IMG/VR virus record: IMGVR_UViG_3300050120_000230
Location: 186,001 to 250,000 of that record
Length of the DNA stretch: 64,000 bases
Reading direction: 5' to 3' (one strand)
Every line of letters begins with the position of its first letter. Position 1 is the first letter of the stretch. Made by a program: the position numbers and the translations under genes. Below, one piece after another: positions 15,343 to 53,564 of this stretch. The notes beneath the pieces are model-generated. The model was not told the DNA's origin and searched no databases. It saw only the letters and a list, made by a program, of their open reading frames with translations.

Positions 15343-15524
15343 TGCGTCGCGAAGTCGTAACCGTGGGGGCGCTTTTGCGTCGTGGCTTCCGGCGAATGCT
15401 GGACCAAGAGGGTGTTTCCTATTCGGAAGACAGGGGGTTCCTCGACAGCCAGTTCATCGTCAAGGGTGAACCCGAGGCGATGGCCCGCGTCGAAAAGCGC
15501 ATCAAGGACACGCTCGGGAAATGA
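15342..15524 (+). CDS. small hypothetical protein
   Basis: TGATG coupling; 60 aa. Confidence 0.65.
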   Translation: MRREVVTVGALLRRGFRRMLDQEGVSYSEDRGFLDSQFIVKGEPEAMARVEKRIKDTLGK

Positions 15525-16090
15525 AGGCCATTTCCAAAGCCATCAAACGCGTTGAGGTAAAGGCCACCATCGAACGCAAGTATGAGGTGGTTCTCACGAA
15601 CAGCGAGAACCAGACCATTTGCGCGCTGCTGACCAATTCGCTCCGCGAGGCCCTCACCGAGGCAGCGGAGTGGGCCGACTTCTGTGGCATCGTTCTAACG
15701 CCGTATCGCGTCATGGGTAAGATCGTAGAGCCGGTCACCAAGGACACCTACAAGCAAACCACGCTCAAGACGTTCGCGCAGCTTCATGCGGAATATCGGA
15801 CGAGCGGTGGCGAACTGAATTGGAACAAGCTGATGCATTGGGAGTGGCAACGCTTCCGGGGCACCTACAAGGACAAGGAAGCCATGAAGTTGTGGCTCCT
15901 GCCGCATTTCATGGAGAGCAAGCCGCCGACGTTTGATGAGGCGGTGGCCCGTGCAGGGACCAAAGACTCCCCGGCCGTCGAATGGCTGAGCGCCAACGCC
16001 ACGGGCTCGTGGATGCCTTCCAAGGGCGGCTATCGGTTCTCCGATGATCGAGATGCCGCTCTGTTCAAACTGTTTTTCGCTGGAAACTAG
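15521..16090 (+). CDS. hypothetical protein, FKL-motif family
   Basis: ends YRFSDDRDAALFKLFFAGN. Confidence 0.7.
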   Translation: MKAISKAIKRVEVKATIERKYEVVLTNSENQTICALLTNSLREALTEAAEWADFCGIVLTPYRVMGKIVEPVTKDTYKQTTLKTFAQLHAEYRTSGGELNWNKLMHWEWQRFRGTYKDKEAMKLWLLPHFMESKPPTFDEAVARAGTKDSPAVEWLSANATGSWMPSKGGYRFSDDRDAALFKLFFAGN

Positions 16091-16911: not shown

Positions 16912-17207
16912 CCAGATATCGATTGAACATCGAAAGCGTAGCTCGTGTCGGCGGCTTCGTTGCGATGCTGTCTGTGTTTTTTATTTTGATGGGAACAACA
17001 CCGGAAGATAGTGTGCCGCCGTGGTGGGCCATCGCTCCCATGATCGTGTTGTTTTTGATGAGCGTCATCTATCTCTCTGGCGGCAACGCAGGCATGAAGT
17101 ATTTCGGAGACTGCCTCGCCAAGTTCTTCCTCATCAAGATCGAACCCGCCGATGAGATTTCCGAGATCGACGAGGATCGCTGCAAGGGCCGAGAGGTTCC
17201 AGATTGA
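16908..17207 (+). CDS. small membrane protein
   Basis: two hydrophobic helices. Confidence 0.6.
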   Translation: MTRYRLNIESVARVGGFVAMLSVFFILMGTTPEDSVPPWWAIAPMIVLFLMSVIYLSGGNAGMKYFGDCLAKFFLIKIEPADEISEIDEDRCKGREVPD

Positions 17208-17512
17208 AGCTCTTCCTCGACGATGAACGGTTTCCTCCGAACGATGGTGCGTTCTGGATCATCGTCAGAGACGTGGGCGAAGCCGTGACGTTGATGGAGC
17301 AGACCGGCTGTCCGGGTTTCCTGTCGTTCGATCATGATCTCGGGAAGAACGTCCCCACGGGTTATGATCTGGCTCACTGGATGGTTGAGCGAGACATGGA
17401 CCAAGATGGCAAGTTCATCCCCGCCAATTTTGAATACTACGTTCACAGTCAAAACCCACCGGGGGCCGCGAACATCAAGGCTTTGCTCGACAATTACTTG
17501 AAACAGCGGTAA
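17204..17512 (+). CDS. cyclic-phosphate-processing receiver-domain protein (cREC-like)
   Basis: KLFLDDER, LSFDHDLG, TGYD and VHSQNPPG motifs. Confidence 0.75.
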   Translation: MKLFLDDERFPPNDGAFWIIVRDVGEAVTLMEQTGCPGFLSFDHDLGKNVPTGYDLAHWMVERDMDQDGKFIPANFEYYVHSQNPPGAANIKALLDNYLKQR

Positions 17513-17540: not shown

Positions 17541-17753
17541 ATGAAACAGAAGCAGCCGCGCAAGGCGCGGAACATGGTGGCGAAGGCAATGCACGAGTGC
17601 AAGCTGTTCGCCCCGAAAGCCATCCCCTCCAAAAAGGGCAAGGGCACCATCTACAACCGTAAGAGCCGGAACGCCAAAGAGCCTTCCGGCTCTTATTATT
17701 TTGGACTACTGGTTCGCTCCGACATATACTTTGGGCATGGCGTTTGCATTTAG
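17541..17753 (+). CDS. arfA: ArfA-like alternative ribosome-rescue factor
   Basis: RNMVAKAMH...LF...KKGKGTIYNRK aligns by eye with E. coli ArfA NAIEALLHDPLF...KKGKGSYMRK; 70 aa with hydrophobic tail. Confidence 0.7.
   Translation: MKQKQPRKARNMVAKAMHECKLFAPKAIPSKKGKGTIYNRKSRNAKEPSGSYYFGLLVRSDIYFGHGVCI
17660..17702 (+). terminator. intragenic intrinsic terminator within the arfA-like ORF
   Basis: AAGAGCC-TTCC-GGCTCTT plus ATTATTTT; alternative stem 17660-70/17685-95. Confidence 0.7.
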
Positions 17754-17917: not shown

Positions 17918-18190
17918 ATGCCATCCATGGAACTAGATGCATCTGACATTCAATTGCTGGCCAAGGCCAAGCAAGGCCCCGTATATCGCGGGCTGTTCGG
18001 CTGGCCGATCAACTCGATGATCGGCCCCATGCGAATCCAACACATGGTAGACTACGGCTACCTGCAATTCATTTACGACTGGGGTAAGGATCGCCCGGCC
18101 GTCCGCATCACGTCGCTGGGAGACTGTCGCCTGCGAGAAGAGTTGGAGCGCGACGTGCAGATCGTTCGGGGCGTCGATATTCGCGTCTAA
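17918..18190 (+). CDS. hypothetical protein
   Basis: 90 aa; follows GAGGA. Confidence 0.65.
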   Translation: MPSMELDASDIQLLAKAKQGPVYRGLFGWPINSMIGPMRIQHMVDYGYLQFIYDWGKDRPAVRITSLGDCRLREELERDVQIVRGVDIRV

Positions 18191-18238
18191 GCGAAGAAAA
18201 ATATTGCAGCCCAATCTCGTATACCATATATTCAAATC

Positions 18239-18502
18239 TCGGGTCGGCCAAACGTGCACGTTCGGCTTTTCCGAGTTACGCCCGTCCAAGCGACCGCATG
18301 AGGACGTTAAACTAAAGGGTGGTGGCTTTTAGCCCGGTTGGGTCGAAACCGGCTCTTGTTTAGGGGACCAAGTTCAACATCCTCTGCGCTCGCTTGTGGC
18401 GCGATGGCGCTAGTCATCATTACAGGTCGGCCCCGCTCTGGGCCGCATTATGGGGTAAGCTACCCCTTGAAAGGCCCCGGCGTATGGCATCGCCGGGGCT
18501 TT
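18239..18502 (+). ncRNA. candidate structured non-coding RNA (~260 nt)
   Basis: TTGCAG-N17-TATATT promoter (18204-32), several hairpins, terminator 18474-18502, no credible ORF. Confidence 0.5.
18474..18502. terminator. probable bidirectional terminator
   Basis: AAAG-GCCCCGGCG-N8-CGCCGGGGC-TTT between convergent units. Confidence 0.7.
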
Positions 18503-18508
18503 GGCATG

Positions 18509-18757
18509 TCAGGGCGGATAATCCACCCAGAACCCCAGTTTGAACATCACGCCGTGTTCCGCTTCCGTGAAGAACATGAACGTGTTGTTCCATTCGGCAT
18601 CATAGCCACTGTGATCCGCCCAACGCAGAGCGCGCCCAATTTCTTCGGTAGTCGCCCTTCGACAGAGTATGTCGAAAAATGCGACGCGAAACGGATACTT
18701 CTCCGCGAACTCGCCCGTCGCTTCAGCCGTCCAAGAGACTTTGTAGGACGGAATCAC
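18509..18757 (-). CDS. hypothetical protein, FKL-motif family
   Basis: GTG start overlapping the upstream stop; ends FFTEAEHGVMFKLGFW. Confidence 0.6.
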   Translation of the reverse strand: MIPSYKVSWTAEATGEFAEKYPFRVAFFDILCRRATTEEIGRALRWADHSGYDAEWNNTFMFFTEAEHGVMFKLGFWVDYPP

Positions 18758-19203: not shown

Positions 19204-19536
19204 CTAGTAGGATTTTAATTTCGGAGGGTTTTCCATACCGGGCCAATGTGTCGGCTCCGGCATGGACTCGTCACTGAAGAACAGCCTGAACATCGCGCGG
19301 TCACGTTCGTCTCTAAAGGAGAACGATCCGTAGCGATTGCTCCACACCATATGGCTCTTCAAGTTGCGGTCGCACCAGTCGAGCATCTCGTTCATTTTCA
19401 CGCGACTGTAGGGCTGAGCCATCGACATCTTGTCCGTCGATGTCCAATATTCACAGGCCGGATAGAGACCGAACTCAAGCGAACCTTTGCGCTGCTGAAG
19501 TTCGTTGATCGGTTCGAGATACCAGAACTTGGCCAT
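19204..19536 (-). CDS. hypothetical protein, FKL-motif family
   Basis: FSFRDERDRAMFRLFF. Confidence 0.7.
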   Translation of the reverse strand: MAKFWYLEPINELQQRKGSLEFGLYPACEYWTSTDKMSMAQPYSRVKMNEMLDWCDRNLKSHMVWSNRYGSFSFRDERDRAMFRLFFSDESMPEPTHWPGMENPPKLKSY

Positions 19537-20186
19537 CAGGCTGCTTCCGGCTGTCTGAAGTCGAACGTCAGCCTGAACTCGACCATGTCGGTCAGGTTCT
19601 CGAACATGAAGCGATACGGTTGTTTCGCCTTGGAGTCCTCAATCTCGTCTTCATCGGGAAGCCAGACGGTCCACCGCCCGCCGTGACGGGTCCTGCCCCA
19701 AATATCGCGCGCGACTTGCCCGGCCGTGGCATGGCCGACCAAGAATACGGCGGTGTGGAACTCGACACCCGCCTTGATGGCGTCCTTGAGATGATCTTCA
19801 GGGATGAAGCCCGAATGTGGGTCCGTCCAGAACGGCGTCTTGAAGTCGTTGAAAACTGGCGGCAGGCCGCTGTTGAAACGTATGATCCGAACAGTCTGCA
19901 AGCGGTTCCTCGTGCGTTTCTTCAAATCCACCATCGGATCATGCCCTTTGGCGATCAACGCTTTGTCTATCTGCCGGTCGCGAGAGATGTCATTGAACAT
20001 ACCGAACGCACTGTCGCGCATGGTCTTTTCCAAGACCATCGTCTTGATGTATCTCTTGATCTCCTGCTTTTGAGCATGGAGATTGTTGATGCCGGGCGAG
20101 CGCCCGTATTCCATCAGTTCCGCGATCTCACGACCGCGAGTAGCCTTGCCTCTATACCATTCGAGGATTTCTTTGCGGTAAGGCAT
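19536..20186 (-). CDS. hypothetical protein, FKL-motif family
   Basis: TAATG coupling; ends FMFENLTDMVEFRLTF. Confidence 0.7.
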   Translation of the reverse strand: MPYRKEILEWYRGKATRGREIAELMEYGRSPGINNLHAQKQEIKRYIKTMVLEKTMRDSAFGMFNDISRDRQIDKALIAKGHDPMVDLKKRTRNRLQTVRIIRFNSGLPPVFNDFKTPFWTDPHSGFIPEDHLKDAIKAGVEFHTAVFLVGHATAGQVARDIWGRTRHGGRWTVWLPDEDEIEDSKAKQPYRFMFENLTDMVEFRLTFDFRQPEAA

Positions 20187-20788
20187 TAGGGGAACATCGA
20201 GACGGAAATGCCGTTCGCGGTCGCGATGTCCGCAGCATCTTTGAATTCGATTTTCTGCGACCAATACTCCCCACGATTGAACGACCACCCCACGCGGTTC
20301 CAGATCGCTTCACAGACCTCGGAGTCGGTGATGCCGGGGAACTTGTCTTCGAGGGGCGCCAGCTTGTCACGGGCCACGACGTAGGCCACCGTGGCTCGGG
20401 CTTCATCGTCCAACGCGACGGTGATGCCCTTGGCGGCACTCACGGCGTCTTTGACGATGGCGGCCACGGCCTTATCACCGGCGGGGCTACCGGCCGAGAA
20501 ACGGGTGGCTGACGGCGCGCGGTAGACCGGCGCGGGCGCTTCCATCAATTCGGCGACCCGGCCCGGCAGGCGGTCGATGGTCGTGGTCATAAGCCCCGAC
20601 ACGTCGAACTGTCCGGTCCTGCCATCAGGGAGAGTCCATTCGACGATGCCCTTCAGGCTGTAGGGCCGGATATATTCGATGGGGAACACGTCTTCGCCGA
20701 TGGTGAAGGTGATCTTCTCGCCGTCTACGAGCAGGATGATGGGAATGACGGTTTGACCGATGACCGCTTGGGTCTTCCACTCTCGCAT
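20186..20788 (-). CDS. hypothetical protein
   Basis: GGAG RBS; TTGACG-N16-TATCTT promoter at 20854-20827. Confidence 0.7.
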   Translation of the reverse strand: MREWKTQAVIGQTVIPIILLVDGEKITFTIGEDVFPIEYIRPYSLKGIVEWTLPDGRTGQFDVSGLMTTTIDRLPGRVAELMEAPAPVYRAPSATRFSAGSPAGDKAVAAIVKDAVSAAKGITVALDDEARATVAYVVARDKLAPLEDKFPGITDSEVCEAIWNRVGWSFNRGEYWSQKIEFKDAADIATANGISVSMFP

Positions 20789-53370: not shown

Positions 53371-53564
53371 GCCGAGTATAGGCAAGTATTTGCCTCCACC
53401 TAGACAGTAATTCCATACCGTCGATCTAATTGTTTACAAACAACAAAATCGAATACTGCAATATCAAAGTTCTGGCGTTGTTCTCTACATGTGATATAAT
53501 AGTCATATGCCGTGGGAACACTCCACGTCTTGATCTTTGATAATTGAAAAGGTATGTGCACACC

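What the first reader, a model, noticed from the sequence alone, without database searches (positions are those of the whole stretch)
18204..18502. Candidate ~260-nt structured ncRNA with its own promoter and terminator
Seen: in an otherwise gap-free genome, a TTGCAG-N17-TATATT promoter opens a region with no credible ORF. It holds nested stems: CTCGG/CCGAG enclosing the palindrome AACGTGCACGTT, CCGGTT/AACCGG, CGGCCC/GGGCCG and GGGGTA/TACCCC, ending at a strong terminator. It does not match tRNA, tmRNA, RNase P or SRP motifs that I know. It lies ~500 nt from the arfA-like gene. Inference: a novel phage RNA.
Basis: partly seen in the sequence, partly recalled or inferred. Interest (0 to 1): 0.65.

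Follow-up and report, generated by a model that had tools for sequence, protein, structure and literature searches.

The report
New structured RNA gene in megaphages
A stretch of about 270 bases between two converging gene blocks of a giant peat/soil phage is very likely the gene for a folded non-coding RNA of an undescribed family, kept with its own promoter in four related phages; its function is not known.

Summary
Window 18191-18508 is a 318-nt ORF-free gap between convergent genes of a 415-kb phage record.

I found three homologous copies in related phages: L015, L023 and G001/L070. All four have a sigma-70-type promoter with a 17-nt spacer; in G001 it is TTGACA-N17-TATATT. In three of them the RNA sits directly at a convergent gene junction, although the flanking genes differ.

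Nine hairpins are kept through compensatory changes:
- 3' half: 13 of 39 pairs changed on both sides, against 4.9 in shuffles.
- 5' half: 10 of 30, against 4.7.
- Column-shuffle z is -8.8.

G-U pairs favour the + strand. No reading frame is conserved. Rfam, ARAGORN, GenBank phages and E. coli genomes give no match.

The "strong terminator" is a strong hairpin, but its U tract is weak in the three GC-rich copies. No RNA data exist, so transcription is inferred.

Verdict: a real, new, narrowly distributed structured ncRNA family. Its function is unknown. My best guess is a stable trans-acting, protein-binding RNA linked to the adjacent arfA-like/cREC module.

The parts
18196..18236 (+). Conserved promoter block: A-rich stretch, -35 TTGCAG (18204-18209), 17-nt spacer, -10 TATATT (18227-18232). 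The predicted start of the RNA is near 18239.
   Evidence: GAAAAATNTTGC and GTWTACCATATA are kept in W, L015 and L023. G001 has TTGACA-N17-TATATT. The spacer is 17 nt in all four. In L023 the -35 lies inside a different upstream ORF. The motif GTWTACCATATWTT also stands upstream of two protein genes elsewhere in the genome.
18238..18275 (+). P1: 5'-terminal hairpin with internal loops. The tip loop UGCA is conserved.
   Evidence: It folds in all four copies with different stem sequences. The tip is GUGCAC, GUGCAU or AUGCAU.
18279..18287 (+). J: conserved single-stranded CGCCCGUCC. It can pair with GGACG in the P3 loop.
   Evidence: CGCC(C/G)GUC is found in all four. The C-G pair becomes G-C in L015.
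18289..18327 (+). P3: helix of 9-10 bp closing a 17-21-nt loop (18298-18318) with the conserved motif GGAC(G/C)UUAA.
   Evidence: 7 of 8 pairs changed on both sides among W, L015 and L023. The loop motif is kept in all four and occurs twice in G001.
18334..18352 (+). P4: hairpin CCGGUU/AACCGG with a variable loop.
   Evidence: helix 4: 5 of 8 pairs changed on both sides.
18363..18385 (+). P5: hairpin with a conserved 12-13-nt loop that can pair with the P3 loop.
18386..18418 (+). P6 and P7: two hairpins, or one longer helix that encloses P7.
   Evidence: P7 has 4 of 6 pairs changed on both sides; the enclosing helix has 6 of 8 pairs changed on both sides.
18428..18445 (+). P8: CGGYCC-CGCUCU-GGGCCG. 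It is nearly invariant and is the most conserved element.
   Evidence: In G001 it is GGUCU-CGCUUA-AGACC, which keeps the pairing.
18452..18466 (+). P9: hairpin with an AGCU loop. It is absent in G001.
   Evidence: (3 of 5 pairs changed on both sides).
18471..18507 (+). P10: 12-bp GC-rich hairpin with UGGCA in the loop (18471-18502), then the conserved tail UGGCAU. This is the likely 3' end or terminator of the RNA and possibly also of the converging transcripts.
   Evidence: The U tract is weak in W, L015 and L023 and is a proper UUUUU in G001. The terminator scan did not call it.

Best explanation
Window ~18239 to ~18507, + strand, is an independent gene for a structured non-coding RNA of about 270 nt that belongs to no described family.

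Shown:
- The sequence is conserved in four related giant phages.
- It folds into a string of about nine hairpins (P1, P3-P10), and their pairing is kept by compensatory changes.
- It has sequence-invariant elements: P8, the P3-loop motif GGAC(G/C)UUAA, the P1 tip UGCA and the P10 loop UGGCA.
- It is preceded in every copy by a sigma-70-type promoter with a 17-nt spacer.

Inferred:
- Host RNA polymerase starts about 7 nt after TATATT.
- The 5' hairpin P1 and the very stable 3' hairpin P10 make the RNA long-lived.
- The P3 loop docks on the J strand or on the P5 loop, giving a compact fold.

Mechanism I think most likely (about 0.3 on its own): the RNA acts in trans as a protein-binding scaffold or decoy, with the invariant hairpins as binding sites. 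It would work with the neighbouring module for translation rescue and RNA-end repair (arfA-like gene, cREC domain gene) rather than by base-pairing with mRNAs.

The confidence of 0.75 is for 'a real, independently transcribed structured ncRNA gene of a new family', not for the mechanism.
For: Homologs and synteny:
- Homologs are L015 (blastn E 1e-26, 70.5% over 319 nt), L023/L024 and G001/L070 (covariance model R2, E 3e-4, plus synteny and motifs).
- Gene order is shared. The genes next to the RNA differ in each phage. In W, L023 and G001 the RNA sits directly at a convergent junction; in L015 one + strand gene intervenes.

Covariation:
- Manual pair table: of 60 pairs, 27 are unchanged, 5 changed on one side, 24 changed on both sides and 4 are broken.
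- 3' half: 94% of cells paired; 13 of 39 pairs changed on both sides against 4.9+-1.7 in shuffles (0 of 500); slid controls give 2-4.
- 5' half: 10 of 30 against 4.7+-1.5 (0 of 500).
- RNAalifold on a sequence-only MAFFT alignment gives -87.9 against -48.5+-4.5 for column shuffles, z -8.8.

Strand: the + strand folds better than the - strand in L015 (-123.7 vs -99.4), L023 (-124.0 vs -113.1) and G001 (-66.2 vs -57.6). This is expected if G-U pairs matter, that is, if the structure acts at the RNA level.

Promoter. The same extended -10 motif lies upstream of two protein genes.

Not coding: conserved nucleotides fall in different frames in different phages.

No known family.

Context:
- The cREC domain scores 86.8 bits and is predicted to process 2',3'-cyclic phosphate or cADPr (PMC7824862).
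- The arfA-like gene has a conserved hairpin and U tract inside its ORF in all four phages.
Against: - There is no expression evidence. The only run holding the DNA is a DNA run.
- Only four distinct sequences exist, all from one small clade, so covariation statistics are weak by R-scape standards. My manual registers and the model-fitted alignments lean towards the structure.
- The middle of the fold is ambiguous. W alone forms a 27-bp long-range stem. P6 has two competing versions. P3 competes with J/GGAC pairing.
- The G001 copy has no significant z-score of its own (-0.76) and lacks P9.
- P10 lacks a good U tract in three copies, so the 3' end is uncertain.
- The promoter in W matches only 8 of 12 consensus positions.
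- Nothing ties the RNA physically to any protein. The link to arfA/cREC is neighbourhood only.
Confidence: 0.75

Rival explanations
1. The region is not a gene of its own. It is a structured spacer and bidirectional termination/insulation region between two converging transcription units, with hairpins that stop or stabilise the 3' ends of the flanking mRNAs.
For: In W, L023 and G001 the copy lies directly where + and - strand gene blocks meet; in L015 one + strand gene intervenes. P10 is a strong symmetric hairpin whose flanks carry short U runs on both strands. W folds about equally well on both strands.
Against: One hairpin suffices for termination, yet nine are kept by compensatory change. 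A promoter with fixed 17-nt spacing is conserved just upstream in all four copies, even inside another gene's coding end. The strand asymmetry favours the + strand. Most of the other 70 convergent junctions of this genome have far shorter or overlapping gaps. In L015 a + strand gene follows the element.
Confidence: 0.1
2. It is a base-pairing small RNA, or a precursor processed into several, that regulates host or phage mRNAs through the conserved loops (P3 loop, P5 loop).
For: It has its own promoter and a terminal hairpin, as trans-acting sRNAs do. The loops of 12-21 nt have conserved sequence.
Against: At about 270 nt with nine hairpins it is much larger and more structured than typical sRNAs. 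The conserved loops are complementary to other parts of the same RNA, which suggests internal contacts. No target could be tested.
Confidence: 0.12
3. It is a cis-acting leader (riboswitch or attenuator) that controls read-through into whatever lies downstream.
For: In L015 and its copies a DUF488-like gene starts about 60 nt after P10 on the same strand. P8 and P10 share GGCCC/GGGCC strands that could swap partners.
Against: In W, L023 and G001 there is no downstream gene on the + strand. No riboswitch or T-box family matches. The alternative P8/P10 pairing (5 bp) is far weaker than P10 at about -25 kcal/mol.
Confidence: 0.05
4. It encodes small proteins: a - strand ORF starting MP(R/K)PR at the conserved ATGCCA just after the stop of the converging gene, or a 5-codon mini-ORF (start-Arg-Thr-Leu-x-stop) in the P3 loop.
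For: In W and L023 the ATG lies 1-2 nt after the upstream - strand stop codon. L015 and L023 - strand peptides align at 43% over 46 aa. The mini-ORF has start, Arg, Thr, Leu and stop in W, L015 and L023, with synonymous changes AGG/CGG and ACG/ACC.
Against: The - strand frame is broken in W after 15 codons. Between MPRPR and RPRAGP, L015 and L023 are read in different frames, so the likeness comes from conserved nucleotides. The mini-ORF has no ribosome-binding site, uses CUG in L023 and is lost in G001. Its 'synonymous' changes are also the compensatory partners of J.
Confidence: 0.03
5. It is a DNA-level element (replication origin or terminus, packaging or recombination site) whose palindromes act as DNA.
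For: It has many inverted repeats, including perfect palindromes (GTGCAC, AGCT), and it sits at a strand switch.
Against: Pairing is kept through G-U wobble on the + strand only. These would be A-C mismatches on the other strand, hence the weaker - strand folds. No repeat family or iterons were found in the genome. The conserved promoter points to transcription.
Confidence: 0.03

Closest known systems
Orphan structured ncRNAs found by comparative genomics in phages and bacteria (for example GOLLD and ROOL; from my own knowledge of Rfam and the Breaker-lab surveys)
   Same: It is a stand-alone, multi-hairpin RNA with conserved loops. It is phage-borne, in a genome rich in tRNA genes, it is defined only by covariation, and its function is unknown.
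   Different: It is much smaller (about 270 nt against about 500-800). It shows no sequence or model match. So far its distribution is limited to four related soil/peat phages.
tmRNA (SsrA)
   Same: It is of similar size class and is a stable RNA. It lies next to a ribosome-rescue gene (arfA-like). Giant phages often carry tmRNA genes (PMC7162821 lists them; not read in detail).
   Different: It has no tRNA-like domain, no acceptor stem or CCA end, and no tag reading frame. ARAGORN and the Rfam tmRNA models find nothing. No SmpB over the family cut-off is found in the genome. There is no similarity to E. coli genomes, ssrA included.
Bacterial and phage Y RNA / YrlA with Ro (Rsr)
   Same: The neighbourhood is tied to RNA repair (cREC). 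It is a structured RNA of a few hundred nt or less. Some jumbo phages carry Ro/TROVE with a tRNA-like partner (PMC7824862).
   Different: There is no TROVE protein and no RtcB in the 415-kb record. There is no Rfam Y RNA hit. The one T-arm-like hairpin (P4) has a loop that is not conserved.
Intrinsic terminator
   Same: P10 is a 12-bp GC-rich hairpin at the end of the element.
   Different: The U tract is only UUU (W), is absent (L015) or is split (L023); it is a full UUUUU only in G001. The arfA-internal terminators of the same phages do have long U tracts.

Membership tests
Any Rfam 15 family | Score at or above the family's gathering threshold | tested here: not met
   There are 0 matches in the whole window. 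At E<=10 only two chance hits lie on the P10 hairpin. There are 0 matches in L003 and L015 at E<=1.
tmRNA | tRNA-like domain (acceptor stem, T arm, CCA end) and a tag reading frame | tested here: not met
   ARAGORN finds none in the window or in the 415-kb genome. There is no Rfam tmRNA hit. The 3' tail is UGGCAU, not CCA.
tmRNA | Partner protein SmpB encoded or used | tested here: not met
   PF01668 gives only a 14.6-bit fragment inside a 426-aa frame, below the cut-off. The record is 72% complete, so absence is not proven.
Y RNA / YrlA | Ro (TROVE) protein encoded nearby, and a Ro-binding stem plus a tRNA-like module | tested here: not met
   There is no TROVE and no RtcB in the genome, and no Rfam hit.
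Sigma-70-type promoter | -35 and -10 hexamers near consensus, 16-18 nt apart | tested here: met
   W: TTGCAG-17-TATATT, 8 of 12, not called by the scan. G001: TTGACA-17-TATATT, 11 of 12. L015: TTGCGC-17-TATATT. L023: TTGCAC-17-TATAAA. Position and spacing are conserved in all four. Activity was not tested.
Intrinsic (Rho-independent) terminator | GC-rich hairpin directly followed by a run of U | tested here: inconclusive
   The hairpin is strong at about -25 kcal/mol.
Structured ncRNA (general criterion) | Base pairs kept by compensatory substitutions beyond controls | tested here: met
   The caveat is that there are only four sequences.
Structured ncRNA (general criterion) | A discrete transcript | not testable with these tools
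   No RNA run holds the locus.
ArfA (the neighbouring gene, context only) | Pfam ArfA match, and synthesis from an mRNA truncated inside the ORF (hairpin or terminator before the stop) | tested here: inconclusive
   PF03889 gives 19 bits, E 1e-3, below the 25.5-bit cut-off. A 13-bp hairpin plus U tract inside the ORF is kept with compensatory changes in all four phages. The KKGKG motif is conserved.

The most novel reading that the evidence does not exclude
The RNA is the RNA partner of a phage module that takes over ribosome rescue. It would be a decoy or scaffold that ties up a host factor (for example the tmRNA-SmpB system or an RNA-cleaving defence enzyme), so that the phage ArfA-like protein, made from a deliberately truncated mRNA, escapes tagging, while the cREC enzyme heals cleaved RNA ends.
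Probability: 0.07. Interest if true: 0.85.

Novelty: new variant of a known kind. Interest (0 to 1): 0.55.

Why it matters
Giant phages carry large sets of translation-related genes, but few of their non-coding RNAs beyond tRNA and tmRNA have been described. This element is a compactly folded RNA with its own promoter. It is kept next to a ribosome-rescue gene (arfA-like) and an RNA-end-processing gene (cREC) in a clade of soil/peat megaphages. If it is expressed, it adds a new RNA family to catalogues such as Rfam. It also gives a concrete handle on how such phages handle stalled ribosomes or RNA damage. It is small enough for chemical probing, pull-downs and structure work.

Tried and rejected
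Searches that found no further homologs:
- GenBank phages, near and distant modes: no match.
- E. coli genomes: no match.
- IMG/VR with both flanking proteins and the arfA-like protein alone: nothing.
- Exact DNA patterns in IMG/VR: only chance hits.
- The P10-plus-tail pattern in 185,579 species genomes: 28 hits, all ordinary terminators.
- Protein word searches with p90, m132 and m110: few or no new contigs. The short contigs L021, L022, L025-L029, L061, L062, L071 and L072 hold no RNA copy.
- No paralog in the genome or in four other jumbo-phage records.

- My first genome-wide z-score script timed out. The second uses only 14 crude shuffles per gap and is used for ranking only.
- Read laying was not used, because the only run is DNA kept as contigs.

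Ideas rejected:
- Resemblance to E. coli tmRNA segments, which I recalled from memory. It is not supported by any search.
- T-arm reading of P4: the loop is not conserved.
- P8-loop pairing with the arfA hairpin: the arfA arms vary while the P8 loop does not.
- Sigma-54 reading of TGGCA: the spacing is wrong.
- Alternative genetic code: genes in the window read well under table 11.

Full report
Setting. The window is bases 186001-250000 of a 415,409-bp IMG/VR virus record, estimated 72% complete. The only public run that holds this DNA is a peat metagenome. ARAGORN finds 52 tRNA genes in the record, including a CTA suppressor-type tRNA, and no tmRNA. A rough gene call of my own gives 661 genes, 90% coding and a median intergenic gap of 9 nt.

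The observation. The + strand 90-aa gene ends with TAA at 18188-18190, and a - strand gene ends at 18509, so 18191-18508 is a 318-nt gap between convergent genes. RNAfold of 18236-18505 gives -125.4 kcal/mol with z -4.56 on the + strand, and z -5.89 on the - strand. Among 71 convergent junctions this is the largest gap without tRNA genes. Rfam gives nothing at gathering score, and at E<=10 it gives only two chance matches on the last hairpin. The promoter scan did not call the promoter (8 of 12 matches), and the terminator scan did not call the last hairpin, which is followed by only UUU. So the anatomy is confirmed, but 'strong terminator' should read 'strong hairpin with a weak U tract'.

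Finding relatives. Searches of GenBank phages, of IMG/VR with the flanking proteins, and by exact patterns gave nothing.

The cREC-domain neighbour led to L003, an AT-richer relative with the same gene order. An alignment of the two arfA-like proteins then found L015, a 19.6-kb metagenome contig. L015 shares eleven neighbouring genes at 40-69% amino-acid identity. It also has a stretch 70.5% identical to the gap over 319 nt (E 1e-26).

An HMMER profile of the 90-aa protein against 1.84 billion representatives gave 11 proteins. Their contigs yielded L023, a 569,661-bp NCBI contig, and the identical L024. The L015-type RNA is identical in four independent samples.

A covariance model of the 5' half then found a fourth, divergent copy in the record that holds L003, about 250 nt beyond the end of that locus (G001/L070; E 3e-4). 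That match is weak by score. It is backed by position, by the promoter and by the shared motifs CGCCCGUC, GACGUUAAAC, GGUCU-CGCUUA-AGACC and UUGGCAC. Pairwise identity among the four copies is 49-67%.

Promoter. All four copies have -35 and -10 hexamers 17 nt apart:
- W: TTGCAG/TATATT.
- L015: TTGCGC/TATATT.
- L023: TTGCAC/TATAAA.
- G001: TTGACA/TATATT, which matches the consensus at 11 of 12 positions.

The block GAAAAATNTTGC plus GTWTACCATATA is conserved although the upstream gene differs. It is p90 in W and L015, an unrelated 111-aa gene in L023 whose stop codon lies inside the spacer, and an AAA-ATPase gene in G001. The motif GTWTACCATATWTT occurs at three places in the genome, where about 0.01 is expected. 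The other two places are upstream of protein-coding genes. I take this as a real promoter type of these phages. Its activity is inferred.

Structure. Cutting the RNA at conserved anchors gives nine modules, and each folds into a hairpin in W, L015 and L023. G001 keeps P1, P4, P5, a single P6/7, P8 and P10.

- In my pair table of 60 pairs, 27 never change, 5 change on one side, 24 change on both sides with pairing kept, and 4 are broken in one sequence. P3, P7 and P9 are almost entirely rewritten yet still pair.
- The tool counts on model-fitted alignments agree. In the 3' half, 13 of 39 pairs have changes on both sides, against 4.9+-1.7 in shuffles (0 of 500) and 2-4 when partners are slid. 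In the 5' half it is 10 of 30 against 4.7+-1.5.
- On a MAFFT alignment made without any structure, the RNAalifold energy is -87.9, against -48.5+-4.5 for column shuffles (z -8.8). The - strand gives -74.7.
- The + strand folds better than the - strand in L015, L023 and G001. This is what G-U pairs produce and what a DNA palindrome would not.

Caveats on the structure. There are only four sequences, and the registers are partly chosen by me or fitted to the model. The middle of the fold is also unsettled:
- W alone forms a 27-bp long-range stem.
- P6 may instead be a longer helix that encloses P7.
- The conserved P3-loop motif GGAC(G/C) can pair with the J strand (C/G)GUCC, with a C-G to G-C swap in L015, or with the P5 loop.
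- G001 has two copies of the loop motif and two CGUC partners. This hints at tertiary loop contacts.

Not coding. Stop-to-stop frames were compared among the three GC-rich copies. The best candidate is a - strand frame starting MP(R/K)PR right after the stop of the converging gene. It is cut after 15 codons in W. Between its conserved ends it is read in different frames in L015 and L023, so the likeness reflects conserved nucleotides and not a protein. A five-codon mini-ORF in the P3 loop (start-Arg-Thr-Leu-x-stop) is shared by three copies but is lost in G001. Its variable bases are also the pairing partners of J. I record it as a curiosity.

What it is not:
- tmRNA: no tRNA-like domain, no ARAGORN or Rfam hit, no SmpB over the cut-off.
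- Y RNA: no Ro/TROVE, no RtcB, no Rfam hit.
- A leader or riboswitch: three of four copies have no downstream gene on the + strand.
- A repeat or mobile element: it is single-copy.

Context. Upstream in all four phages lie three genes.
- A cREC receiver-domain gene (86.8 bits). The domain is predicted to process 2',3'-cyclic phosphate or cyclic ADP-ribose and is linked to RNA ligases (PMC7824862).
- An arfA-like gene (Pfam ArfA E 1e-3, below the cut-off). A 13-bp hairpin and a U tract inside its ORF are kept by compensatory change in all four phages. That is the arrangement by which ArfA is made from truncated mRNA, as I know it from the ArfA literature.
- The 90-aa protein. By eye it looks like a winged-helix regulator, and distant homologs sit next to NusG-like genes.

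The record also encodes an RF-1-domain protein outside the window. The RNA thus closes a module concerned with translation rescue and RNA repair. This is neighbourhood evidence only.

How it most likely works. Shown: a conserved, structured, non-coding + strand element behind a conserved promoter. Inferred: it is transcribed by host polymerase from about 18239, ends at or after P10 (about 18502-18507), and is stabilised by terminal hairpins.

For a mechanism I commit to a trans-acting, protein-binding scaffold or decoy (about 0.3). Three things speak for it. The size and hairpin density exceed those of base-pairing sRNAs. The most conserved parts are whole hairpins with invariant stems (P8, P10). 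The conserved loops are complementary to each other rather than free. The rivals are a base-pairing sRNA (0.12), a termination/insulation spacer (0.1), a leader (0.05), small ORFs (0.03) and a DNA element (0.03).

Verdict. This is a real feature and a new, narrowly distributed family of phage structured RNA with unknown function. Expression remains to be shown. 

Noticed in passing
window 17541-17753 (hairpin 17659-17696); L015 5001-5201; L003 3526-3717; L023 3094-3360: The arfA-like gene (KKGKG motif) has a 13-bp hairpin plus U tract inside its ORF. The hairpin is kept by compensatory changes in all four phages. This looks like a phage ArfA made from a deliberately truncated (non-stop) mRNA. 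The Pfam score is below the cut-off (19 bits).
   Followed up: partly
window 17204-17512: A stand-alone cREC receiver-domain protein (PF20274, 86.8 bits; phrog_1479), predicted in the literature to process cyclic phosphate ends. No RtcB or Ro is present in the record.
   Followed up: partly
window 15521-16090, 18509-18757, 19204-19536, 19536-20288: Several neighbouring proteins on both strands end with a similar C-terminal motif, roughly (Y)xFxFxDExDxxxF(K/R)LxF. They look like a paralogous family around the RNA gene. No Pfam or PHROG match.
   Followed up: no
genome 68331(-), 70728(-), 82401(+), 191080(-) = window 5080(-): The extended -10-like motif GTWTACCATAT recurs. Two sites lie upstream of protein genes. 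The site at 82401 shares 14 identical bases (AATCTCGTATACCA) with the RNA promoter. It may be a phage promoter class or an operator, since GTATAC is a palindrome.
   Followed up: partly
L015 6036-6050: In L015 only, TGGTATACGA, the inverse of the promoter's TCGTATACCA, lies just after the RNA, so the gene is flanked by a 10-nt inverted repeat. It could be a second operator in front of the DUF488-like gene.
   Followed up: no
L003 1660-2030: A GC-rich stretch of about 370 nt without good ORFs in the otherwise AT-rich relative G001, at a different place in the same module. It may be another structured RNA. It has no Rfam hit and is not similar to the RNA studied here.
   Followed up: partly
genome 371074-371332 and 265271-265710; window 53371-53555: Other tRNA-free intergenic gaps fold better than crude shuffles. 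They are possible further ncRNAs or leaders.
   Followed up: no
genome 373385-373472 and 265777-266067 (outside the window): A suppressor-type tRNA with anticodon CTA sits among the 52 tRNA genes, and there is an RF-1-domain protein (48.7 bits) in a 196-aa open frame. Genes in the window read normally under table 11.
   Followed up: no
window 17918-18190; L028 4001-4252; L029 766-1026: The 90-aa protein upstream of the RNA has 11 representative relatives in 1.84 billion proteins. Distant ones sit directly after NusG-like genes, which hints at a transcription factor.
   Followed up: partly
window 18298-18315: A five-codon mini-ORF (AUG/UUG/CUG, Arg, Thr, Leu, x, stop) lies in the P3 loop of three of the four RNAs. 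It is probably a by-product of the conserved loop motif.
   Followed up: yes
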